From the IMG/VR virus record IMGVR_UViG_3300046653_000093, positions 62,001-126,000 of that record: a stretch of 64,000 nt of DNA. One strand, given 5' to 3'. How positions within the stretch are numbered: the first letter of the stretch is position 1; each line of letters opens with the position of its first letter. The notes beneath the pieces are model-generated. The model searched no databases. It was not told where the DNA came from and saw only the letters and a list, made by a program, of their open reading frames with translations. The position numbers and the translations under genes are program-made. Positions 47,033-63,944 of the stretch are shown here, piece after piece.

Positions 47033-47992
47033 TTACATATTTAGCACATATTTATTGCTAACGTACCACTGGCAAGTTTGGGCAATCCCGTCTCTGAATT
47101 TGAATTGCGGATTCCATCCAAGAGTCTTTATCTTATCATTAGACATAGCTAATCTACGATCAAAATTACTCTCGACGTGTTTGATTAACTCATGACCTTT
47201 ACCAATGGTATTACAAATCATCTGAACAACTTCCAGATTGCTAAATTCCTGCTTAGAAGTTATATTGTATATCTCTCTATCAACCCCATTATCAATGATG
47301 CTAAATAACGCAGAGCATGTATCAAATACATGTGTCCACTCTTTAGTATGAGCACCCGAATCATTGATGTTTATATTTTCTTCACTTATATATCTATCAT
47401 TCAATATACAATCAATAATTCTTGGTATTAGATTAGATGCAGTCTGCCATGGACCATAGTTATCACTCAGACGAACAATATTGTAGTGCAAACCTGATAG
47501 CCCATAAAAACTAGAAGCCTTCACCAACAACTCACCAGCCGCTTTTGTAGCAGCAAAGGTTCCTCGCGGATTTGGAGTATCTAATTCATTATATGGGCTA
47601 TCGTTCTCAGACTTTAGTTCGCCATATATATTATTGTCGCTGACATAAACCAATCTAGCATCTATTTTCATGCATTCATTGATAATATTTTGCGTTCCAA
47701 CAAGATTACTACTTACCATGGAGGCTTCATCTTTTGATTCTGCGGCTCCATGGATAACAATATCTGGGCGTTCCTTCTCAAATATTACATGTAGGGTATG
47801 AGCATCTCTAACATCTGCAATATAAAACGAATGATCGGTATTTACGTAGATGTTATGAATAATATGAGAGTCTCGCACCCTATCCATACTAGAAATGGTG
47901 TAGGGCAGTTTCGAATAGAAAACTTGCCGAATGAAGTTCCCGAAAATAAACCCCCCCGACCCCGTGATCAACAATCGCCTTCTTTTAGCCAT
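47033..47992 (-). CDS. RmlB (dTDP-glucose 4,6-dehydratase)-like SDR with degenerate active site
   Basis: HGAAES, NYGPWQ..LIP, EWTHV.D, D.R..M...KI..LGW.P; YxxxK replaced by FAATK. Confidence 0.7.
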   Translation of the reverse strand: MAKRRRLLITGSGGFIFGNFIRQVFYSKLPYTISSMDRVRDSHIIHNIYVNTDHSFYIADVRDAHTLHVIFEKERPDIVIHGAAESKDEASMVSSNLVGTQNIINECMKIDARLVYVSDNNIYGELKSENDSPYNELDTPNPRGTFAATKAAGELLVKASSFYGLSGLHYNIVRLSDNYGPWQTASNLIPRIIDCILNDRYISEENININDSGAHTKEWTHVFDTCSALFSIIDNGVDREIYNITSKQEFSNLEVVQMICNTIGKGHELIKHVESNFDRRLAMSNDKIKTLGWNPQFKFRDGIAQTCQWYVSNKYVLNM

Positions 47993-48141
47993 TAAATAAT
48001 CCCTTTTTATACATCTCTCTTAATGTATCTATACTTCTTCCAAAATATACTGGACATATATCTTTGACGCCTTGATATGTCACAATGCTACAACCAAAAT
48101 ACCACCACTGCCAGTTACCAGAACTTTCTTTCTCTTAGCCA

Positions 48142-49689
48142 TTAGGTCCTTAGTATCTCATCTTTAATTGACTTCAAATGGAACAGTATTTTCTTTAGTT
48201 TGCTTATACGTGGCAACTTTGCCTCAAAGGCTTTCAAATCAGCCAACAGAGATGGTGGTTCCACCAGCTTCGCCATCTTTTCATTTGCCATGAACATAAC
48301 TTCTACGTCAGTAACATTACGAAGTGGAGATGAGAATGGTTGTGTGCTTGGTGTGAAAGCTGAAACACCTCGCTTACCTTTATCATTAGGGTTCAGCCTA
48401 TTTTGACCAATACCAAAGCGATTCTCATACGCCTCAATGGCCTTTTTATATTCGGCAACAACCTCGGAAGCTTTCTTGACGAAGCGCGGTTTTATTCCAT
48501 CCTGTTCTACGCGCCTAAAATTGCCAGCATGCTTCTGTTTCCTATATTCAGAAGTAAACTTACTCTGAGATTTCGCATTAAGTTCTTCCTTAATGGTTGG
48601 CTGTTTAGTAATTGGCAAATCAATATTAGTTATCACGGCCATATTTCTAGCTGATTCAGGATCTATTCCAGCACGAACTAATGATTTTACATACTCATCA
48701 TTTCCACGTACTGCCACTGATACCAGCTTACCACGATCAGGAAAGGTTATTTTTTCAACTACCTTACCATCTGCTGATTTCACCTCTTTAGTATCATTGA
48801 ATGTCGAGTTGATTTTATTTGCCAACTCCTTCAAGATGCGAGCCTCTTCTGTTTCAGTGTTTTTTATCGCTCTCTCCAAAACCTCACTTATAAATTTGAC
48901 ATCAATAACCTTAGAGAATGCCAAATTATTTTCCACCAAAAGAGCAGATAGCAAGAAGCCAAAATTTCCTTTATGCCCAGCCTTATACTCATCAACTTGT
49001 CTCGGATGTGCCGCCATCACTTTCATGCATAGAGGAATCAATTTAATCTCTTCCAAGATACGCTCATCTTCGGCATCTCGAATGCTTTCAGCATTTTTGC
49101 GAGTTATTTCAGACTTAGATAATTGAACGAATTTATATCTGAATTTTGTACACACCCCATCCTTATCTGCAGATGTTGACAAAACTTCATAACGACATCC
49201 TGTCAGACCAACCAATACATCGCCATTTTGAATTAAACTAGAGGTTGTCCAACCTCCAAACTCAGAATCAAATCTAACTTTTGTGATGCCAAGATTTTTC
49301 TCAGACCTAACCACGTTAACCGTTTCACCTGCCTTTTCCAAAAGTGAATCCAAATGTTCACGCTCACGCCTGAGGCGAAGCTTATTAGCTTCGGCCTCTG
49401 ACTTCTCAAAATCAGCACGCAATTTATCCCTATAAGAAGATGATAATGGCAGCTCTAGTTCTGATATTGGTAGCTGGAATGGATAGAAACCATCCATAAA
49501 GGAAAGGCGTGGGTGTTTTTCAGTAACAATCTTTGGCAAAGAATTAAGATCGGGATAGCTCGCCTTGAGAACTTCCCAGCTAATCTGGACGGTAAGTTTT
49601 CCATTACCTTCTATGATATTAATGTCTGAAATATTTACGTTGCTAGGTATTGTATTACCAATGACCTGTTTAATAGTTGAAAGATCCAT
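48142..49689 (-). CDS. Mosaic hypothetical protein with an internal GatB/YqeY-like segment
   Basis: VMAAHPRQVDEYKAG.KG.FGFLL. Confidence 0.5.
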   Translation of the reverse strand: MDLSTIKQVIGNTIPSNVNISDINIIEGNGKLTVQISWEVLKASYPDLNSLPKIVTEKHPRLSFMDGFYPFQLPISELELPLSSSYRDKLRADFEKSEAEANKLRLRREREHLDSLLEKAGETVNVVRSEKNLGITKVRFDSEFGGWTTSSLIQNGDVLVGLTGCRYEVLSTSADKDGVCTKFRYKFVQLSKSEITRKNAESIRDAEDERILEEIKLIPLCMKVMAAHPRQVDEYKAGHKGNFGFLLSALLVENNLAFSKVIDVKFISEVLERAIKNTETEEARILKELANKINSTFNDTKEVKSADGKVVEKITFPDRGKLVSVAVRGNDEYVKSLVRAGIDPESARNMAVITNIDLPITKQPTIKEELNAKSQSKFTSEYRKQKHAGNFRRVEQDGIKPRFVKKASEVVAEYKKAIEAYENRFGIGQNRLNPNDKGKRGVSAFTPSTQPFSSPLRNVTDVEVMFMANEKMAKLVEPPSLLADLKAFEAKLPRISKLKKILFHLKSIKDEILRT

Positions 49690-49736
49690 ACTTTTGTATA
49701 TATCTATACTTTCGCCACCATTTCAGCTTCATGGCA

Positions 49737-50729
49737 TCATTTTGAGCGTTCGATATGAGCTAATCTGGCCCCATAGAATCTGGCGGCCCTCTGTGACACC
49801 TTATACCAATTGATGGTTTCTATCAGCCCATCAATTAATGACGTCCTGGCTTCAAATCCTAAAATCTCTTTAGCCCTAGACACATCAAGGCATCTACGAG
49901 GTTGCCCATCTGGATTTTCATAGTCGTAAATAATAGTTCCTTTATATCCAACAATATCACAAACAGCAGTTACGACCTCATGAATGCTGGTCTCCACCCC
50001 AGTGCCAAGATTGATTATTAGATTAGTATTTAGCTCTCGTTGAATTGCAAGCAACAAATAATGACTAACATCCTTTGCAAAAATAAAGTCTCTAGTAGCC
50101 TTTCCGGTTCCCCAGATATTAACACTATCTTGATTGAGATAATGGGCATCGCATACTTTTTTAACTATAGCCGGTATTACATGAGAGTTCTCTAGATCAA
50201 AATGATCTTTTGGCCCAAATATATTTGATGGAAGAAAGAACACAGAGTTTAATCCATATTGATCCCTATATTTCTCTCCAAGAACAAGTAATGCCTTTTT
50301 GGCAAAAGAATATCCACTATTAGAGCGGTCCTCTCTCCCATTCCAAAAATCATCTTCTTTAAATGGAGTTGCGCAATTTAATGGATAACCACAAGCAGAT
50401 CCGCAATTGTATACATTCTTAATTCTATCCAAATTAGCTTCAATTCCAGAATATAAATTTATACCCATCAACAAGTTTGTATGAGTTAAATTTGCTGGTC
50501 TGCGTTTATTCAATCCAATCCCACCAACAAAGGCAGCTAAATGTAAGATAGTATCGAAATCATTGCTCTTGAAATAGTCAAGAACGCCACCAACATTTGT
50601 AAGGTCCAATTCCTTTGATGATGGTGTTAAAATATCCAAACCATTATTAACAGCTTCTTCAACGACATGCTGCCCAAGAAAGCCAGAGGCTCCAGTAATT
50701 AATATTTTCACATCACCTCCATATTCCAT
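49737..50729 (-). CDS. fcl: GDP-L-fucose synthase
   Basis: GASGFLG, LAAFVGGIG.N, YSFAK, FDLENSHVIPA, WGTG.ATRDF, PDGQPRRCLD. Confidence 0.9.
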   Translation of the reverse strand: MEYGGDVKILITGASGFLGQHVVEEAVNNGLDILTPSSKELDLTNVGGVLDYFKSNDFDTILHLAAFVGGIGLNKRRPANLTHTNLLMGINLYSGIEANLDRIKNVYNCGSACGYPLNCATPFKEDDFWNGREDRSNSGYSFAKKALLVLGEKYRDQYGLNSVFFLPSNIFGPKDHFDLENSHVIPAIVKKVCDAHYLNQDSVNIWGTGKATRDFIFAKDVSHYLLLAIQRELNTNLIINLGTGVETSIHEVVTAVCDIVGYKGTIIYDYENPDGQPRRCLDVSRAKEILGFEARTSLIDGLIETINWYKVSQRAARFYGARLAHIERSK

Positions 50730-51661
50730 GCATCTAATATTTCCAACTCTCTTTCACTTACAATTCCATTATTTACCAAAGATATATATATATGATTCAT
50801 GTTTTGAACCTTATTTTCTCCCAAATGGCACCTGTCCAATATCTCTACTGTTCTTTCCACATCGGAATACATCTGGATTTCATCCACAAAATCCTTCATA
50901 TAATCTTGCCTAAATCTATTTTGATAGACTATAGATTTAGAAAATCCCAAATACAAATTGTCCTGTCTTAGTAATCTTTGTGCGATGTAAGATCTGAGTA
51001 TATCAGCGAATCTCCAAGATACAGTTGACGGGAAATACATATATTGGAAACATTCTTTATTCCAGAATGTACTTTGAGAATTGAATGGGGCATAAGAATT
51101 ACTATCCAATACAAATGGATATTTTACATCAAAATTCAATTGATGATTGAAAACCAATCGGTAGATAGCATCGACATCAGGGTCCTGGTCTATTAGTGTT
51201 TGCCATATACCAACCTTTTTACTATCTCTATTCGACATAGTGTATGTAATGTTTTTATTGATATAACTTAATGGAAATCCCCTATTCCAAATTTTCTCAT
51301 TTGAAAGATATCCATATATATTGGCAAATTTCTCAGAGCTTGATAATACATTATCGCACACAAATCCAGTATCAAAATTCCATGAGTCGTATGGAATGTT
51401 ATCATCATCTGTTTCGTAAATTATGTCGCTACCACAGCGCATAGCCATTAGATATCCTAAGTTCTTTCGACTATAGCGATTTGGCCCAATCATATTTGAT
51501 AGTTTTGAATTTTCTTCATAACGCAAAAATTCAATTTGTGCATCATTATATTCTGGAGTTTTCTTATCACCAACAAGAATAAGCTTCCAATTAGGGATAT
51601 TCTTGAACTTATAAATTGATTCTGTTTCAGAGTTTATTGTGGTTATGATTGTGCTATTCAT
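50708..51661 (-). CDS. STELLO/DUF288-family glycosyltransferase-like protein
   Basis: VGDKKTP, YSRKNLGYL.A, ETDDDN, RGFP, DPDVDAIYRL, PFNSQ.T.W, DILRSY.AQR. Confidence 0.85.
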   Translation of the reverse strand: MNSTIITTINSETESIYKFKNIPNWKLILVGDKKTPEYNDAQIEFLRYEENSKLSNMIGPNRYSRKNLGYLMAMRCGSDIIYETDDDNIPYDSWNFDTGFVCDNVLSSSEKFANIYGYLSNEKIWNRGFPLSYINKNITYTMSNRDSKKVGIWQTLIDQDPDVDAIYRLVFNHQLNFDVKYPFVLDSNSYAPFNSQSTFWNKECFQYMYFPSTVSWRFADILRSYIAQRLLRQDNLYLGFSKSIVYQNRFRQDYMKDFVDEIQMYSDVERTVEILDRCHLGENKVQNMNHIYISLVNNGIVSERELEILDAWNMEVM

Positions 51662-51989
51662 TGTATATTTTTACGCTATCCTCAAATAGCGATTTACCTT
51701 CTATGATAGATTTTTCAATCAATTTATTAATGGCCTCTACTAACCTTGGTCGCTTTTGTTTGAAACAGATATCTATTTTTCTTTTCAATGCCCCTAATTC
51801 CTGATCTGATATGTCTTTATGAATCAAATCTTCAAGCATCCAGGTTCGAATGTGAACTATAATTAGCTTGTCAAGAACTTCCCCTAAACTATCAGTCTCA
51901 ATATATTCTTTAGCTTCAGGAATCTCTTTCTTACCACAGATTTCTGCAACATACTCTTTTATCCGCAAATCTATAATGTCCTTTGGCAT
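51654..51989 (-). CDS. DUF4254-like protein
   Basis: SLGEVLDKL.I.HIR.W.LED. Confidence 0.5.
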   Translation of the reverse strand: MPKDIIDLRIKEYVAEICGKKEIPEAKEYIETDSLGEVLDKLIIVHIRTWMLEDLIHKDISDQELGALKRKIDICFKQKRPRLVEAINKLIEKSIIEGKSLFEDSVKIYNE

Positions 51990-51994: not shown

Positions 51995-52804
51995 TTACAA
52001 TCCTTTTATTTCTTGTTTGATCATTTCAGGAGATACGAGTTTTATTTTTAGATTACTAAATGTAACACTTGATGAAAAAAACAGAGGATGCCGTTCACAA
52101 AGACATGCACAGTTTTTTATGAGCAATAGCTTTGAATCACAACAAATCTGGCAAACTGCACCACCTCCACTTGCTGGTGAAATAATTACATTGCATAAAG
52201 GATGATGCATAACAGATGCCCAATCTTGCAAGTTATCAAGATATGTTACGCCTTTGTCTTTCCAAACCCTTTCAGATCCAATTCCAAAAACAAATACCTG
52301 GCTATATTTTGATTTAAGCATATCTATAACTGATCGATAATAATAATCATTTAGATTTCTATCAGAACACCAATTTCTAATTCTAATCAAAACTCCTGCA
52401 AATTTTTTGGAAATATGATATTTTTCTTCAACATTTGAATAGTCAACTTTCAAAATATCATCTTTACATTCTGGATATTTGTAATGATCAATTTTACCGC
52501 AACTATATTCGTCATGTAATTCCCCAAGATCTTCAAATTTACAAACACGATCTTCTGTATATTTAAAGACATCTTCTGTATCCGGTAGGTCTTCAATCCC
52601 AATAACATTCTTGGCTATTTTTGTATATAGGAATTTTCTATCGGCTATGGTAACGACAACATCATCTGGAGTCCATATCCCTTTATGCAAATCTCTAATA
52701 TACGCCAATCTAGAGACCATAAGTTCCCAGCCGAGTTCAGTATAGTTTTCTGTTGTTCCAATATCAGATTTTTGGCCAGTACCAGTTATTATATATGTCA
52801 TCAA
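51995..52804 (-). CDS. Putative glycosyltransferase
   Basis: Cluster context; weak GT-B-like C-terminus. Confidence 0.4.
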   Translation of the reverse strand: MMTYIITGTGQKSDIGTTENYTELGWELMVSRLAYIRDLHKGIWTPDDVVVTIADRKFLYTKIAKNVIGIEDLPDTEDVFKYTEDRVCKFEDLGELHDEYSCGKIDHYKYPECKDDILKVDYSNVEEKYHISKKFAGVLIRIRNWCSDRNLNDYYYRSVIDMLKSKYSQVFVFGIGSERVWKDKGVTYLDNLQDWASVMHHPLCNVIISPASGGGAVCQICCDSKLLLIKNCACLCERHPLFFSSSVTFSNLKIKLVSPEMIKQEIKGL

Positions 52805-53884
52805 TTACCTCGAATCTGCTAAGCTCTCAACCATAGTTACTAATTTATCAGTCAGGAAATTCCAATCATTATCCTTGCGATCAAGATGAGTTTGAATTAG
52901 TTCTTGTCTTATTTTGTAATACTCATCTTTGAAATCATTACTCAAAAGTCTCTTTAGATTGGCTAGATTTTGATCTTGGCGCGCAGGGTCATATGTCCAC
53001 TTCAGGATATCGTGACCATATGGATCCCACCACTCTTCGTGGCCAAATAGCGGAAGTCCTTGGCAAAGGAACTCATTAGCAAAGTATGGAAACCCTTCTG
53101 AATATGAGGTGTGTGCCAAATATGCAAAATCGGATAATATCTCTCTAACCGCTCTGTCTGTTTTGTAAATGTGACTTATCACATTATACGATGAACTGTC
53201 AAAGTTGTTTGACTTTAGCATATCTATGAGCTGTTCTGCATTTTTGCCACCAGCATCTTTCCCACCTCTATTATAGATTAGCATTTTCAATTTAGATAAT
53301 CTAATATTTCTATTATAGAATGTAGAGAAATAGGCTTTGTCTATTGGGTGCGGAACTAGCTCTATATTTTGTATGCTTGATACTAGTAATTGTTTCGTTT
53401 CAAGCACATCAATATTATCTGAATTCCATTTGCGTATTGCTACATCATTAGTTTTGAAGATTGCGCCATAAAGCCCTTCAAGTAAAGATGGGTGAGTGGG
53501 ATATGTATTAGATCCTATTCCATACTTATTGAATTTACCATACTTCCACTTATCAACTTCAAAATTATCGTTGTCAATAATAATTGAGCGCTCAGGAAAC
53601 TTTTTCAATTGGTAAGAGGGGCGTGCAGAAATGAATACATCTTTATTTGTCATTTGTATTTCATTTTTAGGTAATACAAACTCTTCAGTTGGCCCATTTT
53701 TCCAATTGGTATATATTGTATTCTTTGGAAATTTTGCTAATATAGAATTGTATACAAAATATGTTATCTGATCCCATGAACATCTTCTGCCATGCAAATA
53801 ACCATTTGGATTTTCTGGAGGTAATGATATGTAGATATTCATAACCTTATCCACTCTGGAGGTGCTAGGTCTGTTGTTGACCAT
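52805..53884 (-). CDS. Putative GT-B glycosyltransferase
   Basis: SYSEGFPYFANEFLCQGLP (EX7E motif). Confidence 0.55.
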   Translation of the reverse strand: MVNNRPSTSRVDKVMNIYISLPPENPNGYLHGRRCSWDQITYFVYNSILAKFPKNTIYTNWKNGPTEEFVLPKNEIQMTNKDVFISARPSYQLKKFPERSIIIDNDNFEVDKWKYGKFNKYGIGSNTYPTHPSLLEGLYGAIFKTNDVAIRKWNSDNIDVLETKQLLVSSIQNIELVPHPIDKAYFSTFYNRNIRLSKLKMLIYNRGGKDAGGKNAEQLIDMLKSNNFDSSSYNVISHIYKTDRAVREILSDFAYLAHTSYSEGFPYFANEFLCQGLPLFGHEEWWDPYGHDILKWTYDPARQDQNLANLKRLLSNDFKDEYYKIRQELIQTHLDRKDNDWNFLTDKLVTMVESLADSR

Positions 53885-54564
53885 GCGCTATAAGCGGGAC
53901 CAAACCAATTGCTAGGCGCAACAACTACCTTATCTTCTGCCTTACTTAACCACGCCGCCCACCAAGAAAAAGAACTATTTGCTATAATGAAATCGGAACA
54001 ACTAACCATTTTACTGAAATCAGAAATTGTAGAAGATGTCTCGTTTATAGTAAACTCATTGCCCTTGAAGTTTTGTTTGCACCATTCAGTATCATCAGAA
54101 AATACCATGAATTTCTTCGTTGGAATCTTTTCTGCTGCACTCATATAATATTGCATCGTTTGAGTTGGATGATGCTTTGGATAGTTTAAATAATCTCCAC
54201 GGCGAACATGAATACAACAATAATCCTTCATGTCTTCAACTGGAATTGGCGATAATATTTCTTTGATGTAATCCTTGCAATTATCAAAGTATCTCCAGCT
54301 TTGAAAATAACCAGATAATGAACAGTTATTCTGAAATGGTATCTCTACATAATGATACCCAGATTCTTTGTATTGTGTAGATATCTTAATAGAAGACTTA
54401 TCAATAAAATACTCGTCTGGTATGTTTGTCCAACTTTGAAATTCCCATTTTGGAAAGCAAAACTGAACATTGTATCTCTTCGCATATCCAATAGTTGCAG
54501 CTATCTGAAATAAGGAATTACCAAATCGACCATGATGCCCAAGTTCAATAAATGTAGCTGTCAT
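53839..54564 (-). CDS. GT11 alpha-1,2-fucosyltransferase
   Basis: GRFGNSLFQ, GYFQS, HVRRGDY, FSDD, IANSSFSWW.AWL. Confidence 0.92.
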   Translation of the reverse strand: MTATFIELGHHGRFGNSLFQIAATIGYAKRYNVQFCFPKWEFQSWTNIPDEYFIDKSSIKISTQYKESGYHYVEIPFQNNCSLSGYFQSWRYFDNCKDYIKEILSPIPVEDMKDYCCIHVRRGDYLNYPKHHPTQTMQYYMSAAEKIPTKKFMVFSDDTEWCKQNFKGNEFTINETSSTISDFSKMVSCSDFIIANSSFSWWAAWLSKAEDKVVVAPSNWFGPAYSAWSTTDLAPPEWIRL

Positions 54565-54565
54565 A

Positions 54566-55324
54566 TCATCTATCCATGATTCTCTTGTATGGAAGCATCG
54601 ACCTGATTCTTCTTTCTGTTTCAATTTGCAAACTTCGGTCTACTTTCGCTTCATTAATTGGCGATGTATAATTGTATACATATAATACATCTGGTATAAA
54701 TGATTGCTTAGGACCGGCAAGCTCAAGCATTGGGAACATAGTAGCCAAATCTCCAGCCGCCCTAAACCAATCACCTTTGTACATCAAATCTTCTTTGCGT
54801 ATCATCTTGTAAAGCCAAGCATAATGAGTTCTTAAGTGAGATGAACACCATTGATAGCGCCTAAACATATTGGAATCAATTATGTTCTTAGGTATCTCAC
54901 ACGAAAATCCATGACTATTATCTGAATATGATATCCATTGACCATAGGTAATCCATATATCTTTTTCATTGTACTCTCTATTTACACGAGTCAATACATC
55001 ATTGTTTGCAAGCCAATCATCACCATCTAACAGAACAACAATCTCGTCATCATCACAACTATGTATCATGTTGTATGTATTACCAATTGGTAATAGACGT
55101 TTAGTATTTCTAGTCAGAATAATTTTATGATTATTGTCATGCTTGGAGATAATGCGTTCTACCTCATCGGCGGTCCCATCAGTTGAACAATCATCTGCAT
55201 AAATAATCCTAAAGTCTGGATAATTCTGGTTCAAGGCAGAAAGAAGATTCTTCTCGCACCAATCTATATTTTGATAGCTTGGAATTACAATAACAAATCG
55301 ATTAACTTTTGACATACAAAGCAT
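54566..55324 (-). CDS. GT2 glycosyltransferase
   Basis: DDCSTD, LDGDDWL. Confidence 0.85.
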   Translation of the reverse strand: MLCMSKVNRFVIVIPSYQNIDWCEKNLLSALNQNYPDFRIIYADDCSTDGTADEVERIISKHDNNHKIILTRNTKRLLPIGNTYNMIHSCDDDEIVVLLDGDDWLANNDVLTRVNREYNEKDIWITYGQWISYSDNSHGFSCEIPKNIIDSNMFRRYQWCSSHLRTHYAWLYKMIRKEDLMYKGDWFRAAGDLATMFPMLELAGPKQSFIPDVLYVYNYTSPINEAKVDRSLQIETERRIRSMLPYKRIMDR

Positions 55325-56871: not shown

Positions 56872-57588
56872 ATTGAATATCTTATTCAATTCATTGTTAT
56901 ACTTCGAATATGGCCTAACCGAATGAATATCATAATAGTAACCTTTGCTAACCAATTTTCTATCGTATCTCCAAGTTGAGCGATCTATCCTGTGCCCATT
57001 CTGACCGCCATCTCGCTGAATGAAATGAAACAGTGACTTATACTCATAATTATTTATTAGCATTGTTGAAGATACTTCATCAACAGACCAATGCTCATTA
57101 CCATCATGGTTAGTATTAATTCCATTTGAGGATATAATTGCTTTATCTATATACATATCAAAATCAACATTCCCAAGAACCTTGCTGTAAGTATTCCCAG
57201 ATGCAATATGATAGCAAGCCGGGATATTGTTTGCACATGGGTTTATGTGAACGTATTTATCGTTCGAGATCTGCTCTAGTTGAGTATTGAAGTAAAAATT
57301 TGACAGCGGATACATATCAATATCAGAAATAATACCAATCTTATTTCCAAGTTGTGTCGCATACCAATACCTAACAATTTGACATTGTAAAGATATTGAA
57401 AATCTTGGAATTGGCTTTATTCTAATTACATTACCATATTCTTCTGATATATTAATACTCTCGTTATCTTCTATATAAAGCAATATAGGGTTTATATTCA
57501 ATCTTCTCCATGCTTTAGACACAGAAGGCCAAAAATCCAAATAGAATGAATTTGAGTTAGAACTATTTATAGCAACATCTATTTTCAT
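56863..57588 (-). CDS. Putative GT-A glycosyltransferase
   Basis: ISDIDMYPLS DxD motif; cluster context. Confidence 0.5.
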   Translation of the reverse strand: MKIDVAINSSNSNSFYLDFWPSVSKAWRRLNINPILLYIEDNESINISEEYGNVIRIKPIPRFSISLQCQIVRYWYATQLGNKIGIISDIDMYPLSNFYFNTQLEQISNDKYVHINPCANNIPACYHIASGNTYSKVLGNVDFDMYIDKAIISSNGINTNHDGNEHWSVDEVSSTMLINNYEYKSLFHFIQRDGGQNGHRIDRSTWRYDRKLVSKGYYYDIHSVRPYSKYNNELNKIFNLL

Positions 57589-58520
57589 TACAAGATTTTC
57601 CTAAAATAAGATATAGTCTCCTTAAGCCCATCATCTATATTTACGGATGGCTCCCAAGAAAGTTTGTTCTTAGCCAAGCTAATATCTGGTTTACGTTGCT
57701 TTGGATCATCCTGCGGAAGAGATTTGAATATCAGTTTCGACTTAGCTTTAGTCTGAGTCAATATCTTCTCTGCTAGCTCTAACATCGTAAACTCACCAGG
57801 ATTTCCCAGATTGATTGGTCCGGTAAAGCCAGCCTCTGTATCCATCATGCGCAACATGCCTTCCACCAAATCATCAACATAACAGAAAGAACGTGTCTGC
57901 CTGCCATCTCCATAGATTGTGATGTCCTCACCACGTAAGGCCTGCACAATGAAATTGGAAACTACGCGCCCATCGTTTGGATGCATTCGAGGCCCATAGG
58001 TATTGAATATCCTAATCACTTTGATATCAAGGTTATGCTGCCTGTGATAATCGAAAAACAATGTCTCGGCACAGCGCTTACCCTCATCATAACAACTGCG
58101 AATGCCAATCGGATTAACTCGGCCCCAATAACTTTCAGGCTGGGGATGTACCTCAGGATCACCATAGACTTCTGAGGTTGAAGCCTGAATAATGCGTGCT
58201 TTGACTCGTTTAGCCAGGCCAAGCATGTTGATGGCCCCGTGTACGGATGTTTTGGTCGTTTGCACAGGGTCAAACTGGTAGTGCACTGGGGATGCTGGGC
58301 AGGCTAGATTGAAAATTCGCTCAACTTCAACATACAGAGGAAATGTCACATCGTGTCGCATCATTTCAAAAAGTGGATTATTAAGCAGATGAGCAATGTT
58401 CTTCTTGGTACCCGTGAAGTAATTGTCCACGCAAAGAACTTCGTTCCCAGACTTCAACAGACGTTCACATAGATGCGAGCCAATAAATCCAGCGCCGCCA
58501 GTGACCAAAACTTTATTCAT
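57588..58520 (-). CDS. uxs: UDP-glucuronate decarboxylase (UDP-xylose synthase)
   Basis: [54 protein letters not shown]. Confidence 0.95.
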
Positions 58521-58522: not shown

Positions 58523-59350
58523 TTATCCTTTGAATGGAATATGGATTGGCTTAAAGTGATTCATATACAATCCACAATTCTTCTTGAAAGCATCTACAAG
58601 CTCATCATGTTGCTGAGTTTTGAATTTACGATATTCATTTACCTCACCATTATCCTCACCCAAATGAATGCCCATCTTTTCAACGTATCCCATCTTAAAG
58701 TTGGCAACTCTGGCGCGAATTCCAAAATCGCTGTCCTCAAGGCCATACTTATTGTACTCAGTATTGAAGAAGCCTATCATTTGGTGTAGCTGTTTGCGAA
58801 ACACCATACAGGCCGTTCCCAAATTACCAGCTGGCTTATCCTGGAAGACGCAGCCATTATGAGTTACCAAAGGATAGGATTTTGGTTCGAAGTTTACCCC
58901 AATAGCGCCATAGCCTTTATTGGACTCCAGAATTTTGATGCTGTCCTCTAACCATCCATTTGGTAGTTGAACATCATTATCAATAGTGCAATACCAAGTT
59001 GGCTTCAATTCATCAGCCTTCTTTAGGGCTAGATTGCGACCAATGGCAATACCCTTATTCTCTGGGAGCAGAATCAACTCTACTTCTTTCAATGGGTCTT
59101 TGTCGCGGCCAGGGGCCATCATTGAGCTGGCAAGTTTTAACTTCTTGAGATATTCCGGGGTTCCATCACTTGATCCGTTATCTACTATTACAAGAGAAAA
59201 TGGATGTTTCGTGCTACTAGATAAAGCAGCTACCGTCTTTTTGGTAAGATCAAGCCGATCATATGTTACCATCATTAAAACAGTGTCAGTTTTCATTATT
59301 TTTCCTTTCATGCGGACAATAACCATAGGATCCGCGAGATACAGCGGCAT
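58523..59350 (-). CDS. GT2 glycosyltransferase
   Basis: [20 protein letters not shown]. Confidence 0.85.
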
Positions 59351-59353: not shown

Positions 59354-60313
59354 TCATAAGCCCTCGCAAATCCCAAACACATCTATCGGAGATACATGTC
59401 GATCTGTAAATATATCATTGTTCACCCCAAGAAATTCGGCATTTTTAAACAAACTATACTGATTGTCCAGGTGTCTCGAAATAAGTTTGGCATCTGATAT
59501 AATAAGAGAAATCAACAACCAATTAATATCATTTGATAATACCATCCAAGACTTCTTGATTGTTTGTAATATGTTTCTTAGACTATATTCAATTGCCAAT
59601 ATATTTGTTCCATAAAAGGCGCTGGTTTTATGTGTAAACACAATAACTTTCCAACCCTTATGAGATGCCAGTTGAGAAAATTCTTTGATGTTCTGTAAGT
59701 TCCATCTTAGGATATCTTTATTGGTATTGCTTAAGACAATAGATATAACTTTGGTAGTTTGCCTAACTCTACCAGTGTTATGCAGCTCATCAAAGAATTC
59801 TGTTCCAAGACCACGAAGCTTTGGGACATAATTTCTCCAAGGAATCATGATATTTCCAGACATCTGTTCTAAAACAGGAGCCTTAACGACATCCGGATAC
59901 TTTCCCCAATAACTTTTGCGAACCAGATAGTTGTTCAGGATGTTTAGGTAGGCATTACCACCGTTATCTAAGAATAACGGAACTGGATACTGCTTCAATA
60001 TCTCTGGCGTTAGTTTGACCGGACTGATCTTGCATAATCCCTGAGCCCTAACAAAAAACGAATACTCAGGATTGCCAAGCCAATAAATCTTGTGAGAAGA
60101 ATCAAAAGATACAAGAGCTTCAGCTGCGCTCAAAGAGAAAAACGATTCTAACAAACCGCCGAATGCAGCAATTATAATCTCACGACCATCCAGAACTTTA
60201 TGCCAAGTTTCGAAATCAATTTCTGGAATAATATACTTTCCATTACTCAATTTCCAGGGAATTCCTGGTGAAAATGGAAAGAACCTAGACCTGTATTTCT
60301 TTTTCGGCTTCAT
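59354..60313 (-). CDS. Degenerate GT9-like protein
   Basis: FGGLLESFFSL resembles the GT9 N-terminal motif; weak. Confidence 0.35.
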   Translation of the reverse strand: MKPKKKYRSRFFPFSPGIPWKLSNGKYIIPEIDFETWHKVLDGREIIIAAFGGLLESFFSLSAAEALVSFDSSHKIYWLGNPEYSFFVRAQGLCKISPVKLTPEILKQYPVPLFLDNGGNAYLNILNNYLVRKSYWGKYPDVVKAPVLEQMSGNIMIPWRNYVPKLRGLGTEFFDELHNTGRVRQTTKVISIVLSNTNKDILRWNLQNIKEFSQLASHKGWKVIVFTHKTSAFYGTNILAIEYSLRNILQTIKKSWMVLSNDINWLLISLIISDAKLISRHLDNQYSLFKNAEFLGVNNDIFTDRHVSPIDVFGICEGL

Positions 60314-61104
60314 TAGTCGTCATACTTGTAAATCCCAGACCATTTACTTCGAAATAACTTTGCATTAGTACCCATCATTAATTTGTGCATTGGGTTCTTC
60401 TTTAAAGTTGCGCTTTCCTCATGGAATACATTGGTCTTACCACAATACATAATCTTCTTATTCATGCCATACTTTACAGATAAGCAGGCATCGATGTCTT
60501 CGAATGACCAGAAGAAGCCCTCGTCCATTCCAACTCTACCGCTCTTGTTTGAAATGCAGATCCTCCTATAATCGCCAGCCCGAATCAAGACCAATGCTCC
60601 AGTTACGGCTTGGAATTCACGATTCTTCTTAGCACTTTCATCGGCCACTTCTTGATGCCGATAATGGTATGGGAAATAGTTATACTTCTTGGAAAAATAC
60701 ACACCAGCATGCTGAAGCTTTTGCCCATCCGGATACAATATCCTAGCGCCAACCATACCTACATCATCAGTTAGCAACTTGAACATTTCCACAACCGAAT
60801 TCTTGTCATTGAACCACAAATCATTGTTGAGCAGCATGATAACGTCATCATCAGCCGGCTTGGTTCGTTCAAATAGAACGTTCATTCCACCAGCAAATGA
60901 ATCTGTATTGTGGCCACAGAAAAATGTATCCACTCTATCGCTTTGTATTGACGACAGATACTCAGCCGATCCATCCTTTGAACCATTATCCTTGATCCAC
61001 CATTTGTAATCATACATCTCAACGGCTGGTATGAGAGATTTGTAAAGGCGCTCTATTTTTTCCTTAGCGTTCCAATGAAGCGTAAATATCATCAATTTGC
61101 TCAT
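60313..61104 (-). CDS. GT2 glycosyltransferase
   Basis: DNGSKD, LLNND, AVTGA, FEDID. Confidence 0.85.
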   Translation of the reverse strand: MSKLMIFTLHWNAKEKIERLYKSLIPAVEMYDYKWWIKDNGSKDGSAEYLSSIQSDRVDTFFCGHNTDSFAGGMNVLFERTKPADDDVIMLLNNDLWFNDKNSVVEMFKLLTDDVGMVGARILYPDGQKLQHAGVYFSKKYNYFPYHYRHQEVADESAKKNREFQAVTGALVLIRAGDYRRICISNKSGRVGMDEGFFWSFEDIDACLSVKYGMNKKIMYCGKTNVFHEESATLKKNPMHKLMMGTNAKLFRSKWSGIYKYDD

Positions 61105-62096
61105 AAAGAAACCCTCTCTGTAATTTTACATTGCTTTTCGTGACAATGAGGACACCAAGTCCCAATATTCCTGACGCTGTGCATTGTAGCCAGCCATTCA
61201 TGGCCTGACTTACATTTCCATCGCAACTTTTTATTTGCCGAGACGTATTCATCGGACAAACAAAACCCACCTCGATTAGAGGCCACAAACTTAGCATCGT
61301 CTAATGTTAGTTTCTTCAAACCGCAACAAGACGGACACCAACTTCCATTTTCTATAGAATACCCAACCGCACTCCATGTGTGGCCATGTTCACATTGCCA
61401 AACCAATGGCTCATGAAAATTAATATACGCATCAGATAAACACTTACCATATCTTTCAGACGCCAAATCCTTGTAATAACCAAGCCTATCAAAACCACCT
61501 TGAAGCTTAGACATATCTACATGTATATTGTTAATGCTTGCTGGCAATGATATCCTCAACCTTTCGCACTCTTTGACCAAAAATTCACCAAGATCCTTTA
61601 GCTTAATTTCTCTAAATATCTCGGGTATAATCATCAGCTTAACTCCAAGTTCTCTGCATTTATTGGCCTTGAACAAATCTCTCGACTTTTGCTTATTCAA
61701 CGAAGATCCGTCGCGATGAAAGTATGGTACATTTGTATTGTGCTGAACTCCATTGTGTTCAAAAGCAATGGCCAACTCATGACAATATCCGTCAAGCTCT
61801 AAATTATATTTGCTGTGTTTCAGCCAAGCTGGCCGTATCTTTACAAATGGCTTTCCGAATATAGCCTCTAAATACAATCTACAAATACCCTCCCCAATAT
61901 TTGAATTGCATTGGTTGCACCAAGACTTATAATATTGGATATGCTTCCAAGCCAGAGAAAACGCATGTCCAAATTCACACTCCCACATCAATGGCTTATT
62001 TGCGTTTATATAAATGCTACTAAGGCACTTGCCGTTTTTGGATTTGGCAAGTTCATTACAGTCGTTGATTGTTATCTTCCTATATTGATTAGACAT
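61101..62096 (-). CDS. Zinc-ribbon-repeat PD-(D/E)XK-like endonuclease
   Basis: Three G.CLS..Y......L.W.C..GH.W/F...WC..C repeats; LELDGY..ELAIAFEHNG.QH. Confidence 0.8.
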   Translation of the reverse strand: MSNQYRKITINDCNELAKSKNGKCLSSIYINANKPLMWECEFGHAFSLAWKHIQYYKSWCNQCNSNIGEGICRLYLEAIFGKPFVKIRPAWLKHSKYNLELDGYCHELAIAFEHNGVQHNTNVPYFHRDGSSLNKQKSRDLFKANKCRELGVKLMIIPEIFREIKLKDLGEFLVKECERLRISLPASINNIHVDMSKLQGGFDRLGYYKDLASERYGKCLSDAYINFHEPLVWQCEHGHTWSAVGYSIENGSWCPSCCGLKKLTLDDAKFVASNRGGFCLSDEYVSANKKLRWKCKSGHEWLATMHSVRNIGTWCPHCHEKQCKITERVSL

Positions 62097-62129
62097 AGCA
62101 TTCCTATCAGTAAGAATATATAATTATGC

Positions 62130-62810
62130 CTATTTATTGCCCCATATTTCTATAAACGTTTTCTTAGACTTCAAATACAGATCTGATAATACTTTCTTCC
62201 CGGTAACTCTGCCAATGTGTCTGACAGGCACATCAACAACTTTAAACTCAATACCAAGGCCCTTAGCTCTAAAGGATAGGTCAGTATCCTCGAAGTAAGA
62301 TATGAACTTAGTAGAAAATGGACCAACATCGCCTTCTAGAATCAAACGATCCCAAGTAGCAACAGAGGCAGTGATATTCCATCCGCTTAGGTAGAAAAGA
62401 AACCCAGTCGTAGGAAGCTTGTTCATCTCACGAACAAAGTTCAAATGAATATCTAACAGCCCAATGGTTGGACCTACAAGGAACCCATTTTGAGCCTCAC
62501 GAATAATAGGCTCTGTCCACACAGAATTTTCCTCGGCAATACGAATATCATTGTTGAGGAACATTATGTTTTCATAACCGAGACTGACAGCCCTTTCGTA
62601 ACCAGTATTGCACCCCTTAGCAAACCCAAGATTCTTGGAATGTCGTACGACAGACAATCTGGCTGATGATTGTAGTTGTTTGGTACTGTCTGTGCTTCCA
62701 TTATCCACTACAACAAACCCATGGTCTTGTGGAAGATGGGATAGATCTGATAATGCGCGCTTTGTATATGCCCAATTGTTCCAGGCCGGAATAACGATAG
62801 CTAAACTCAT
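62130..62810 (-). CDS. GT2 glycosyltransferase
   Basis: VDNGSTD, NLGFAKGCN, LNND, FEDTD. Confidence 0.85.
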   Translation of the reverse strand: MSLAIVIPAWNNWAYTKRALSDLSHLPQDHGFVVVDNGSTDSTKQLQSSARLSVVRHSKNLGFAKGCNTGYERAVSLGYENIMFLNNDIRIAEENSVWTEPIIREAQNGFLVGPTIGLLDIHLNFVREMNKLPTTGFLFYLSGWNITASVATWDRLILEGDVGPFSTKFISYFEDTDLSFRAKGLGIEFKVVDVPVRHIGRVTGKKVLSDLYLKSKKTFIEIWGNK

Positions 62811-62822
62811 TTATTTCTCCAT

Positions 62823-63944
62823 TCAAGGTACGCACATGTCTATAATTTTTTGGGCTGCATTATTCCAAGTGAACTTGCTAGCAGTATCTGTCATATTTTG
62901 AGCAAACCCAGCTTTCAATGAATCTAATTCAAATACAGCCCTTCGAAGTTTTTGGGCAGCGTCATCAGTATCAATCTCAAAATGAACAGCAAATGGATTG
63001 AATGCCCAATATTGATGATCTCTTGGTGCCCTTGTGATTGTGCCATCTATAAGAATAGAATTCTCATCATTACAGAAATCTAGTTGTCCACCATATCTAG
63101 GAACTACATTAACAATTCCAGAAGCTAGAGCTTCCAATGATGGTAGATGCCAACACTCAGCATAAGTAGCAGAGAAATTTATATCACAAGACTTATAGAT
63201 GTCTGCGATATTTGTTATATATGAATGGACAAACTCTACTTCGGCGTGCTGTGGAAACTTAGATTGAAAAGTTTTAAACAACGCAGTGAAGTCTATGTCA
63301 AATGGATGGTCTTTCTTGTTATGCTTGAATACTTTAGCTATCAAACATACATCATCATCCTTGGTAAAAGCTTTACCAAAAGCCTTAAGAGCTAAATGTA
63401 ATGCTTTGCGCCGATGTGGCTGGGCAATATTAAGAAGTATCTTCTTTGTCTTCCTAGTATTTAGCTTGAATGTATTATCACTCTTGAAATCTTCAAGATT
63501 TATTCCATGAGGAACTACCATCATCTTTTCTATGGGGATACCCATACTAATAAATACATCTCTAGAGAAATTAGATGAAGGAAGAACAAGGTCAGTTGAT
63601 TTGTAAAACTTAGAAAAACCTTGAAGTAATGCTAAGTACTTATCATCTGACCTTTTATTGTTGTATTCGTAATTCCAAATACCAAATCTATTCTTTGTAC
63701 CCCATTTAAGATAATTTGGCCAATTATGAGGTGCTGTGTAGCTAATTTGGCAGTCATATAATCCAGATGGTTCTTGTTTAACAAATGGCATTATATCCTC
63801 TGGTATAAATCTCTTTTCAAGTCCATCTGTAGAAATAAACTCTACATTATGTCCTAACTTAATAAGTGATCTGCCTAAATTCTGCCCAACCACACTCCAA
63901 CTATGATTTTGGCCAAATAGAAATTGTTGGATTTTTATTCTCAT
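62823..63944 (-). CDS. GT4-like glycosyltransferase
   Basis: VPHGI, RK, AECWHLPSLEALASG. Confidence 0.85.
   Translation of the reverse strand: MRIKIQQFLFGQNHSWSVVGQNLGRSLIKLGHNVEFISTDGLEKRFIPEDIMPFVKQEPSGLYDCQISYTAPHNWPNYLKWGTKNRFGIWNYEYNNKRSDDKYLALLQGFSKFYKSTDLVLPSSNFSRDVFISMGIPIEKMMVVPHGINLEDFKSDNTFKLNTRKTKKILLNIAQPHRRKALHLALKAFGKAFTKDDDVCLIAKVFKHNKKDHPFDIDFTALFKTFQSKFPQHAEVEFVHSYITNIADIYKSCDINFSATYAECWHLPSLEALASGIVNVVPRYGGQLDFCNDENSILIDGTITRAPRDHQYWAFNPFAVHFEIDTDDAAQKLRRAVFELDSLKAGFAQNMTDTASKFTWNNAAQKIIDMCVP

What the first reader, a model, noticed from the sequence alone, without database searches (positions are those of the whole stretch)
47033..63944. 17 kb phage glycan-building cluster with paired fucosyltransferases
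Seen: GDP-fucose synthase, UDP-xylose synthase, GT11, GT10, a STELLO-like protein, FkbM, four GT2, a GT4 and several putative GTs, with no flippase, polymerase or initiating transferase in the window. Inference: a cytoplasmic pathway building a methylated Fuc/Xyl glycan on virion proteins (as in giant viruses) or on DNA, or remodelling host LPS/EPS. Alpha-1,2 plus alpha-1,3 fucosylation would resemble Lewis-type epitopes.
Basis: partly seen in the sequence, partly recalled or inferred. Interest (0 to 1): 0.65.

Follow-up and report, generated by a model that had tools for sequence, protein, structure and literature searches.

The report
Huge-phage glycan-building island beside tail genes
A 392-kb peat phage carries 19 sugar-activating, sugar-transferring and methylating genes right after its baseplate and fibre genes; a core of this module holds the same position in 57 of 58 related phage contigs, so it most likely coats virion proteins with a strain-variable glycan, though remodelling of host LPS is not excluded.

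Summary
Window 47033-63944 is a tightly packed island of 19 genes. It has at least 11 glycosyltransferases, three of them seen only by fold or language-model features, one FkbM methyltransferase and four unknowns. No island protein has a membrane segment. The whole 392-kb phage record has no flippase, polymerase, initiating phosphoglycosyl transferase, GMD or UDP-glucose dehydrogenase.

The island is not a chimeric host segment. It sits between the baseplate-J/2265-aa/999-aa structural genes and a tubulin gene. In 57 of 58 related viral contigs, a GT4 homologue follows the 999-aa gene. There is a conserved inner set (GT4, GT2, GT2, RmlB-like) and a low-GC, cassette-like variable part.

Best reading (about 0.45): a cytoplasmic pathway without a lipid carrier glycosylates virion baseplate or fibre proteins, as in giant viruses and mycobacteriophages. 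Main rival (about 0.3): extension of host LPS core, which also needs no flippase genes. DNA glycosylation is unlikely. Fuc/methyl/GT clusters are already known in jumbo cyanophages, so this is a new variant of a known kind. Its target is untested.

The parts
47033..47992 (-). RmlB-like NDP-hexose 4,6-dehydratase (319 aa). It is the last gene of the island, 14 nt before the tubulin gene, and is conserved in the relatives.
   Evidence: TIGR01181 gives 212 bits, below the 365 cut-off. PDB dTDP-glucose 4,6-dehydratases match at E 9e-39. It lies next to tubulin in the relatives.
48142..49689 (-). unk515, a 515-aa protein of unknown function
   Evidence: No Pfam or NCBIfam family. Only 16 relatives among 1.84 billion representative proteins. 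The Atlas model is poor, pLDDT 0.49.
49737..50729 (-). GDP-L-fucose synthase (GMER/Fcl family, 330 aa)
   Evidence: NF047922 gives 237 bits. PDB GMER matches at E 3e-53 and the catalytic residues are kept.
50708..51661 (-). DUF288/STELLO-family glycosyltransferase (317 aa)
   Evidence: PF03385 gives 37.6 bits. 5,354 full-length homologues of about 325 aa were found.
51654..51989 (-). DUF4254 protein (111 aa), function unknown
   Evidence: PF14063 at E 3e-10.
51995..52804 (-). unk269, a GT9-like (heptosyltransferase-fold) glycosyltransferase
   Evidence: AF2 pLDDT 77. Foldseek finds WaaF/WaaC (E 6e-6) and TibC.
52805..53884 (-). unk359, a GT-B fold glycosyltransferase from a family with no Pfam model
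   Evidence: 35 homologues, none with a Pfam domain. AF2 pLDDT 91. Foldseek finds GT4-type enzymes at E 2e-8.
53839..54624 (-). GT11 fucosyltransferase. The true start is probably the internal ATG about 20 codons in.
   Evidence: PF01531 gives 104 bits. The HVRRGD motif is present. It is 34-36% identical to cyanophage GT11.
54566..55324 (-). GT2 glycosyltransferase (GT2a)
   Evidence: PF00535 gives 64.9 bits.
55302..55985 (-). FkbM-family methyltransferase, a probable sugar O-methyltransferase
   Evidence: PF05050 gives 56 bits and TIGR01444 gives 59 bits.
55948..56871 (+). GT10 fucosyltransferase, the only gene on the opposite strand. Its orientation is conserved in the relatives.
   Evidence: PF00852 gives 26.2 bits. 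The EN[ST]...YxTEK motif is present. PDB 3-alpha-L-fucosyltransferase A matches at E 5e-6. The relatives keep it on the opposite strand.
56863..57588 (-). unk241, a 241-aa protein of unknown function
   Evidence: No family found. A piece of it is present in an RNA library.
57588..58520 (-). UDP-xylose synthase (UDP-glucuronate decarboxylase). It is unique to this phage among the relatives sampled.
   Evidence: PDB UXS1 matches at E 1e-121. It is 85-86% identical to Myxococcota MAG proteins. No orthologue turned up in the relatives. Its GC is 0.44.
58523..59350 (-). GT2 glycosyltransferase (GT2b) with a weak Glyco_transf_7C match; part of the conserved set in this subclade
59354..60313 (-). unk319, probably a GT9-like glycosyltransferase; part of the conserved set in this subclade
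   Evidence: Atlas feature score 0.96 to GT9-containing clusters. Conserved in the relatives.
60313..61104 (-). GT2 glycosyltransferase (GT2c), in the clade-wide core
   Evidence: PF00535. Present in 49 of 58 related loci.
61101..62096 (-). unk331: an unknown N-terminal part plus a C-terminal DUF4379 treble-clef zinc finger
   Evidence: PF14311 at E 8e-10. Present in some relatives.
62130..62810 (-). GT2 glycosyltransferase (GT2d), in the clade-wide core
   Evidence: PF00535. Present in 51 of 58 related loci.
62823..63944 (-). GT4 (GT-B) glycosyltransferase. It is the first gene of the island, directly after the 999-aa structural-module gene, and belongs to the clade-wide core.
   Evidence: PF00534 and PF13439 score just over their cut-offs. 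A homologue follows p999 in 57 of 58 related loci.
45624..47018 (-). Tubulin/PhuZ-like gene, the conserved boundary of the island on the downstream side (direction of transcription)
   Evidence: phrog_4733 and TIGR00065 match weakly. PF00091 is recorded for the relatives.

Best explanation
The island is a virus-encoded glycosylation module that is soluble and needs no lipid carrier. It belongs to the core genome of a large clade of uncultured huge phages.

Shown:
- Three enzymes finish activated sugars from host intermediates. UXS makes UDP-xylose from UDP-glucuronate. A GMER-type enzyme makes GDP-L-fucose from GDP-4-keto-6-deoxymannose. An RmlB-like dehydratase makes an NDP-4-keto-6-deoxyhexose.
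- At least 11 glycosyltransferases and one FkbM methyltransferase are encoded with them.

Inferred:
- The inner set builds a conserved inner oligosaccharide. This set is GT4, GT2d and GT2c, conserved across the clade, plus unk319 and GT2b in this subclade.
- The low-GC, cassette-like set adds strain-specific outer sugars, including alpha-linked fucose, xylose and a methyl cap. This set is GT2a, GT11, GT10, unk359, unk269 and DUF288, with FkbM, UXS and Fcl.
- The acceptor is most likely a phage protein made from the same gene block: the 999-aa and/or 2265-aa baseplate-associated fibre proteins encoded immediately upstream. It would be glycosylated in the cytoplasm before assembly. Giant viruses do this for capsid and fibril proteins, and mycobacteriophages for capsid and tail-tube proteins.
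For: - Enzyme identities.
- All island proteins lack membrane segments. The 392-kb record has no Wzx/Wzy/WecA-like protein and no Bac_transf match.
- The island lies on the same strand directly after baseplate J, the 2265-aa protein (ConA-like lectin domain) and the 999-aa protein (dockerin-like Ca-binding domain). Genes inside the island are nearly contiguous.
- In 57 of 58 related viral loci with enough sequence, a GT4 homologue follows the 999-aa gene, down to about 30% identity. The order p2265, p999, GT4, GT2d, GT2c, then further genes, RmlB-like, tubulin is kept. The island spans 6-10 kb in distant members and 17 kb here.
- A module this fixed in a structural gene block behaves like a core virion function. 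The cyanophage clusters, by contrast, are sporadic accessory islands (PMC7824862).
- The fibre-like proteins are evenly conserved, while the island's middle is replaced between relatives and has GC 0.32-0.36 against 0.43 for the genome.
- Precedent: the Mimivirus glycogene cluster includes the gene of its glycosylated fibril protein, and those clusters are clade-specific (PMC9614988). Chlorovirus capsid glycans contain Fuc, Xyl and Rha and are made in the cytoplasm by viral enzymes (PMC5408694).
- Identical fragments of four island genes occur in a peat metatranscriptome library.
Against: - No direct evidence identifies the acceptor.
- Adjacency to the fibre genes is also adjacency to the replication block (tubulin, helicase, DnaB) on the other side.
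- No promoter or terminator pattern defines the transcription unit.
- LPS core or LOS is also built by soluble GT4, GT9, GT2, GT10 and GT11 enzymes without Und-P, Wzx or Wzy, so the missing membrane machinery does not discriminate.
- The field's usual reading of similar jumbo-cyanophage clusters is host surface modification (PMC7824862, PMC12801897).
- The 999-aa and 2265-aa proteins have no Ser/Thr-rich tracts or other recognisable glycosylation signal and no solved relatives.
- The RNA-library fragments could be carried-over DNA.
Confidence: 0.45

Rival explanations
1. Host envelope remodelling. The phage transferases extend the host's lipid A-core (LOS/LPS outer core) or another envelope glycolipid at the cytoplasmic face of the inner membrane. 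The host's own MsbA/Lpt machinery exports the product. The changed surface blocks superinfection by other phages or stops progeny being lost on cell debris.
For: - GT9-like (unk269, unk319), GT4, GT2, GT10 and GT11 are the families that build LPS core and Lewis-type LOS.
- LPS core assembly needs no Und-P transferase, flippase or polymerase genes of its own, which fits.
- This is the interpretation given for the comparable clusters of jumbo cyanophages P-SSM2, S-SCSM1 and S-SCSM2R (PMC7824862, PMC12801897).
- Cassette-like, low-GC variation resembles O-antigen loci.
Against: - The core of the module holds the same position in the structural gene block in 57 of 58 loci, across phages whose fibre proteins are only 30% identical and which probably infect different hosts. 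An accessory host-surface function would be expected to be sporadic, as in cyanophages.
- No tyrosine integrase was found, so there is no evidence of the lysogeny in which seroconversion usually pays off.
- The host is unknown, so a Gram-negative envelope has not been shown.
Confidence: 0.3
2. The island acts on something other than virion proteins or LPS. Candidates are host or phage cytoplasmic proteins, a soluble oligosaccharide, or a small-molecule aglycone made during infection.
For: All enzymes are soluble. Four island genes remain without assignment: unk515, unk241, the N-terminal part of unk331, and DUF4254. Iyer et al. propose secondary-metabolite-type sugar clusters in some cyanophages (PMC7824862).
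Against: No aglycone-forming enzyme (PKS, NRPS, halogenase, carbamoyltransferase) was seen in or next to the island. Eleven or more transferases imply a large glycan on a defined acceptor. The fixed position after the fibre genes would go unexplained.
Confidence: 0.1
3. DNA hypermodification. The transferases glycosylate hydroxymethylated bases of the phage genome to evade restriction.
For: Phage DNA glycosyltransferases adding one to a few sugars are known (cited in PMC12619734 as Pyle et al. 2024). The island borders the replication genes.
Against: The genome's only thymidylate-synthase-family gene matches canonical thymidylate synthases best (E 1e-67), so no dCMP/dUMP hydroxymethylase was found. 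Fucose, xylose, sugar methylation and 11 or more transferases go far beyond any described DNA glycan. The families found (GT10, GT11, GT9-like, DUF288) are not DNA transferase families.
Confidence: 0.03
4. Artefact: a bacterial polysaccharide locus wrongly joined to a phage contig.
For: The GC dips to 0.32-0.36 in the middle of the island. UXS is 85-86% identical to bacterial proteins.
Against: The same layout occurs in 57 of 58 related viral contigs from many metagenomes. A 118-kb contig from a peat run (possibly the source sample) spans 55501-61500 with no differences. Two further studies hold identical fragments. Phage genes flank the island tightly on both sides.
Confidence: 0.01

Closest known systems
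Sugar-nucleotide and glycosyltransferase clusters of jumbo cyanophages (P-SSM2, S-SCSM1, S-SCSM2R)
   Same: - They are 15-22-gene phage clusters with SDR epimerases/dehydratases, GDP-fucose synthase, GT11, GT10 or NodZ-type fucosyltransferases, GT2/GT4 and methyltransferases, and no export machinery (PMC12801897; PMC7824862).
- GT11 here is 34-36% identical to the cyanophage GT11, and Fcl is 34% identical.
- Their function is untested too.
   Different: - Cyanophage clusters carry GMD and are described as sporadic, polymorphic accessory islands.
- Here GMD is absent. UXS, DUF288 and GT9-like enzymes are present.
- The core of the module is fixed after the baseplate/fibre genes across a whole clade.
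- GT10, unk319 and the 999-aa protein have no match in 50,697 GenBank phage records.
Giant-virus glycosylation machinery (Mimivirus fibril glycogene clusters; chlorovirus capsid glycans)
   Same: - Glycans are built by virus-encoded cytoplasmic enzymes on virion proteins.
- The clusters are clade-specific, with 9-21 genes: a 4,6-dehydratase, several GTs and a methyltransferase.
- The Mimivirus cluster includes the gene of the glycosylated fibril protein R135.
- Chlorovirus glycans contain Fuc, Xyl and Rha (PMC9614988, PMC5408694).
- unk359 has the same fold as many giant-virus GTs, including Mimivirus L138.
   Different: - Those are eukaryotic viruses. No orthology is shown here beyond the shared fold and family.
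- Their glycan structures and targets are demonstrated experimentally. Here they are not.
Mycobacteriophage virion glycosylation (Freeman et al. 2023, as cited in PMC12619734 and PMC12801897)
   Same: Phage-encoded glycosyltransferases modify capsid and tail-tube subunits in the cytoplasm. This is the only demonstrated phage virion glycosylation I could find cited.
   Different: Those systems have a few genes (two putative glycosyltransferases in phage Maravista, PMC11256854). This one has 19 genes with its own sugar-nucleotide enzymes. The paper itself was not held, so details could not be checked.
Bacterial LPS core / LOS biosynthesis with Lewis-antigen mimicry (Helicobacter type; from general knowledge)
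   Same: Sequential soluble GT9, GT4, GT2, GT10 and GT11 enzymes act without Und-P, Wzx or Wzy.
   Different: No Kdo or heptose pathway genes and no lipid A genes are present. The locus is phage-borne and tied to virion genes.

Membership tests
GT11 (alpha-1,2-fucosyltransferase family) | Pfam PF01531 above the gathering score, and the GDP-fucose-binding HxRRxD motif | tested here: met
   104 bits against a cut-off of 23.9. HVRRGD is present.
GT11 (alpha-1,2-fucosyltransferase family) | Alpha-1,2 linkage to a defined acceptor | not testable with these tools
   Needs an enzyme assay.
GT10 (alpha-1,3/4-fucosyltransferase family) | Pfam PF00852 above the gathering score, and the conserved EN[ST]...YxTEK motif | tested here: met
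   26.2 bits against 23.9, a marginal pass. The motif is present. PDB 3-alpha-L-fucosyltransferase A matches at E 5e-6.
GDP-L-fucose synthase (GMER/Fcl) | NCBIfam equivalog score of at least 500 bits | tested here: not met
   237 bits. It is still the best-scoring family by far.
GDP-L-fucose synthase (GMER/Fcl) | Catalytic Ser, Cys, Tyr-xxx-Lys and His of E. coli GMER | tested here: met
   All align in the 1bsv alignment.
De novo GDP-fucose pathway | GDP-mannose 4,6-dehydratase present with GMER | tested here: not met
   No TIGR01472-level match in the 392-kb record. Relative G002 does have a GMD next to Fcl.
UDP-xylose synthase (UXS) | Full-length close similarity to a characterised UXS | tested here: met
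   Human UXS1 at E 1e-121, covering residues 3-309 of 310.
dTDP-L-rhamnose pathway (RmlABCD) | RmlB equivalog score, with RmlA, RmlC and RmlD present | tested here: not met
   TIGR01181 gives 212 bits against a cut-off of 365. No dTDP_sugar_isom and no NTP_transferase in the genome.
Wzx/Wzy- or ABC-dependent O-antigen/capsule locus | Initiating phosphoglycosyl transferase, flippase or ABC exporter, and polymerase | tested here: not met
   No Bac_transf match. No ORF has more than 5 predicted membrane segments. The two 5-segment ORFs are a BPD_transp_1 permease and an unknown.
DUF288/STELLO glycosyltransferases | Pfam PF03385 above the gathering score, and full-length similarity to family members | tested here: met
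   37.6 bits against 27.8. 5,354 homologues of about 325 aa cover 97-100% of the protein.
Viral virion-glycosylation systems (giant-virus / mycobacteriophage type) | Virus-encoded soluble transferases with their own sugar-nucleotide enzymes, encoded next to virion genes | tested here: met
Viral virion-glycosylation systems (giant-virus / mycobacteriophage type) | Glycan covalently attached to a virion protein | not testable with these tools
   Needs virions or co-expression, then mass spectrometry.
Phage DNA glycosylation systems | A hydroxymethyl-pyrimidine-forming enzyme (dCMP/dUMP hydroxymethylase) in the genome | tested here: not met
   The single ThyA-family gene matches canonical thymidylate synthases best, at E 1e-67.

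The most novel reading that the evidence does not exclude
A whole clade of uncultured huge phages, 300-450 kb, from peat, soil and freshwater, wears a phage-made 'glycocalyx' on its baseplate fibres. The inner glycan is conserved. The outer part contains fucose or xylose, carries a methyl cap, and is exchanged by cassette between strains. It is built in the cytoplasm without a lipid carrier, as in giant viruses. In this reading the variable glycan, not the evenly conserved fibre protein, is the diversifying surface. It would set adsorption, stickiness to the matrix, or escape from host recognition.
Probability: 0.2. Interest if true: 0.85.

Novelty: new variant of a known kind. Interest (0 to 1): 0.6.

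Why it matters
Virion glycosylation by a phage's own enzymes has been demonstrated only for a few small mycobacteriophage systems. Large sugar clusters in jumbo phages have been read, without test, as host-surface modifiers, and were said to occur mainly in cyanophages (PMC7824862).

This locus shows a much larger system, with at least 11 transferases. Its core is a fixed part of the structural gene block in at least 57 related huge-phage contigs. Its outer part varies like an O-antigen locus.

If the acceptor is the fibre or baseplate, phages would join giant viruses in making complex virion glycans on their own. That bears on host recognition, persistence in peat, and the design of glycan-decorated phages.

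The island also supplies several uncharacterised transferase families for glyco-enzymology: the unk359 family, the unk269 family and the bacterial-type DUF288.

Tried and rejected
- Promoter and terminator scans over the island and the fibre genes were at chance level and gave no operon boundaries.
- A motif seen in two intergenic gaps (GTATAGATA) is not a genome-wide promoter element: 6 hits against about 2.4 expected per strand.
- unk515 gave nothing from Pfam, NCBIfam, the Atlas or the 1.84-billion-protein search beyond 16 orphan relatives. BLAST shows no similarity to the C-terminal extension of the relatives' long Fcl proteins.
- PDB sequence searches with p999, p2265 and GT4 found nothing.
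- Huge phage LR756500 shares only UXS, not the island.
- The 'moraphage' lineage (PMC12619734) has core glycosyltransferases, but its genomes reach only 307 kb. I could not link it to this clade.
- Host inference is contradictory, so I name no host. UXS is closest to Myxococcota and Xanthomonadales proteins. The tmRNA tag begins AND, as in Pseudomonadota tags (from general knowledge). Shine-Dalgarno-like motifs precede only 22% of long ORFs. Phage GC is 0.43.
- The partial shares in runs X5 and X6 reflect low coverage of the same phage, not alternative cassettes.
- Complex prediction was not run. An enzyme-substrate contact is transient and the test's sensitivity for such pairs is low, so neither outcome would have moved my odds much.
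- The Freeman et al. 2023 paper is not held.

Full report
**Where the window lies.** The window is bases 219445-283444 of a 391,957-bp IMG/VR virus record that CheckV rates 91% complete. Phage identity is clear:
- There is a terminase-like ATPase, a DnaB-type helicase, a second helicase, a ribonucleotide reductase and a tRNA nucleotidyltransferase in the window.
- A baseplate-J protein lies just beyond the window end.
- The genome has 51 tRNA genes and a tmRNA.

The phage occurs in peat metagenomes. Four runs from three studies hold the stretch whole, though these may include the source sample. Other peat studies hold identical low-coverage fragments.

**The observation.** Positions 47033-63944 hold 19 genes, 18 on the minus strand and one on the plus strand. 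Most overlap or are separated by fewer than 50 nt.
- *UDP-xylose synthase (57588-58520).* It matches human UXS1 at E 1e-121 over its full length.
- *GDP-L-fucose synthase (49737-50729).* It matches GMER/Fcl structures at E 3e-53. It keeps the Ser, Cys, Tyr-xxx-Lys and His residues of E. coli GMER.
- *GT11 (53839-54624).* It has the HxRRxD motif.
- *GT10 (55948-56871, plus strand).* It passes Pfam only marginally. It does carry the family's EN[ST]...YxTEK motif and matches a solved core alpha-1,3-fucosyltransferase at E 5e-6.
- *STELLO-like protein (50708-51661).* It is a full-length member of a large bacterial DUF288 family of about 325 aa.
- *Others.* FkbM, four GT2 and a GT4 are as described.

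- Three of the unnamed ORFs are glycosyltransferases by fold or features. unk359 folds with pLDDT 91 into a GT-B enzyme. unk269 resembles GT9 heptosyltransferases, including the protein-modifying TibC. unk319 resembles GT9-containing clusters by language-model features.
- That gives at least 11 transferases.
- unk515, unk241, the N-terminal part of unk331 and DUF4254 remain unassigned.

**What is missing.**
- No island protein has a predicted membrane segment, and no ORF in the whole record has more than five.
- The two five-segment ORFs are an ABC-type BPD_transp_1 permease and an unknown.
- There is no Bac_transf phosphoglycosyl transferase.
- There is also no GMD, UDP-glucose dehydrogenase, RmlC or sugar nucleotidyltransferase.
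- So the phage encodes only the last steps of sugar activation and depends on host UDP-GlcA and GDP-4-keto-6-deoxymannose. The alternative is that the RmlB-like enzyme feeds the GMER-like enzyme, as the R141/L780 pair does in Mimivirus (PMC9614988). This is unresolved.
- A relative (G002) carries a canonical GMD next to its Fcl. Its GMD match is split in a 720-aa protein, probably by an intein.

**Context and relatives.** Just beyond the window, on the same strand, lie three structural genes: baseplate J (1085 aa), a 2265-aa protein with a ConA-like lectin domain, and a 999-aa protein with a dockerin-like calcium-binding domain. The island follows, then a tubulin/PhuZ-like gene 14 nt after the RmlB-like gene.
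- A tubulin query found seven viral contigs, one of them identical to this phage. All carry an RmlB-like gene next to tubulin.
- Fetching the whole interval in four relatives showed a fixed order. It runs: baseplate J, p2265, p999, GT4, GT2d, (DUF4379 protein), GT2c, unk319, GT2b, a variable block, (Fcl), RmlB-like, tubulin.
- Two further relatives have the same layout, one on a 453.6-kb contig. Their variable block holds other content, and one shows a DegT aminotransferase and a homing endonuclease. A separate 18-kb contig, found through the unk359 family, carries formyl- and acetyl-transferase-like genes.
- A profile of the 999-aa protein found 70 viral loci at 30-100% identity, on contigs up to 448 kb.
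- Of the 58 loci with at least 4 kb after that gene, 57 have a GT4 homologue after it, 51 have GT2d and 49 have GT2c. RmlB-like and tubulin close the island wherever the sequence reaches that far.
- The island spans 6-10 kb in the distant subclade and 17 kb here.
- The clade has no member among 50,697 GenBank phage records.

Within the island, the block from DUF288 to unk241 has GC 0.32-0.36 against 0.43 for the genome. This is the part that differs between relatives. UXS is found only in this phage, is 85-86% identical to Myxococcota MAG proteins and has GC 0.44, so it looks recently acquired. By contrast, p999 and p2265 are evenly conserved and have no hypervariable tip.

**Not an artefact.** A 118-kb contig of one peat run, possibly the source sample, covers 55501-61500 with no differences. 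Two other studies hold identical fragments. A peat metatranscriptome library holds four identical contigs of 156-194 nt, in GT10, unk241, UXS and GT2c. DNA carry-over in that library cannot be excluded. Together with the synteny, this rules out a chimeric host segment.

**How it most likely works.**
- *Shown.* The locus is a soluble set of sugar-nucleotide finishing enzymes, at least 11 transferases and a methyltransferase. It is encoded by the phage. Its core is conserved and its periphery is exchangeable.
- *Inferred.* The conserved transferases build an inner oligosaccharide on a conserved acceptor. The variable ones add strain-specific outer residues (fucose by GT11 and GT10, xylose, others). 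FkbM methylates a terminal sugar.
- *The acceptor.* This is the open point. I favour virion proteins of the same gene block, p999 and/or p2265, at about 0.45. The module behaves as a core structural-block function across deep divergence. It is also the variable element beside conserved fibres. Giant viruses set the precedent: a clade-specific glycogene cluster that includes the gene of its glycosylated fibril protein (PMC9614988), and cytoplasmic synthesis of Fuc/Xyl/Rha capsid glycans (PMC5408694).
- *The main rival, about 0.3.* Extension of host LPS core or LOS uses the same enzyme families and needs no flippase genes. It is the usual, untested reading of the comparable cyanophage clusters (PMC7824862, PMC12801897).
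- *DNA glycosylation.* This is unlikely. The only ThyA-family gene is a canonical thymidylate synthase, and the enzyme families do not fit.
- *Lewis-type epitopes.* This remains speculation. Linkage and acceptor cannot be read from sequence. The only hint of a galactosyltransferase is a borderline Glyco_transf_7C match in GT2b.

**Comparison and novelty.** Phage clusters with GMD, Fcl, GT11, GT10 or NodZ, several other GTs and methyltransferases are already annotated in cultured jumbo cyanophages (PMC12801897). They were reviewed as occurring 'primarily' in cyanophages (PMC7824862). The kind is therefore known. What differs here:
- the phage clade, which is uncultured, from peat and related habitats, and absent from GenBank phage records;
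- the fixed position after the baseplate and fibre genes in 57 of 58 loci;
- the conserved-core plus variable-cassette architecture;
- the enzyme set, with UXS, DUF288, GT9-like enzymes and two transferase families without Pfam models, but no GMD.

I found no paper that describes this. I rate it a new variant of a known kind, with interest 0.6.

**Limits.** The host is unknown and the hints conflict. The transcription units are undefined. One fold model is only moderate, pLDDT 77 for unk269. The GT9-like call for unk319 rests on language-model features alone.

Noticed in passing
window 34371-38297 (-): The ribonucleotide reductase large subunit is 1308 aa. Its RNR matches fall at residues 27-170 and 596-1305, and an endonuclease-like insert lies between them (302-485). 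This is probably an intein.
   Followed up: no
L014:8185-10347 (relative G002); L016:13052-14806 (relative G003); L107:14142-14957: Sugar genes in the relatives' islands carry selfish elements. One GMD has a split match in a 720-aa protein. One NTP_transferase carries LAGLIDADG and intein-splicing domains. A free-standing LAGLIDADG ORF sits between GT11 and GT2 in another relative.
   Followed up: partly
window 63983-64117 (-), running past the window end; L002:28-162: A 44-codon ORF with a lipoprotein-type signal peptide and lipobox lies in the 249-nt gap between the 999-aa gene and GT4. It is not conserved in relatives G001-G003, so it may not be a real gene. If it is, it recalls the small receptor-blocking lipoproteins encoded beside receptor-binding genes in phage T5.
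   Followed up: partly
genome G000 210332-210422 (outside the window); window 3-74, 2839-3358, 15427-15501: The genome has 51 tRNA genes and a tmRNA with tag ANDNAYAAAA. One tRNA has anticodon CTA and would read TAG. The island's ORFs are intact under code 11, so I used no recoding.
   Followed up: no
genome G000 140134-141312 (L018, L019): This is the only other GT2 in the genome. It sits apart from the island, next to a three-segment DUF2721 membrane protein.
   Followed up: partly
window 45624-47018 (-): A tubulin/PhuZ-like gene closes the island in every relative where the sequence reaches that far. Its nearest GenBank phage match is Bacillus phage G at 25% identity.
   Followed up: partly
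window 57588-58520 (-): UXS is 85-86% identical to Myxococcota MAG proteins and about 80% to Xanthomonadales proteins. It is absent from all sampled relatives and has a higher GC than its neighbours. It looks like a recent capture from a bacterium.
   Followed up: partly
window 40867-42636 (-): A 589-aa ATPase matches both terminase-large-subunit and DnaC-like helicase-loader PHROGs, and it sits next to DnaB. Its role is ambiguous.
   Followed up: no
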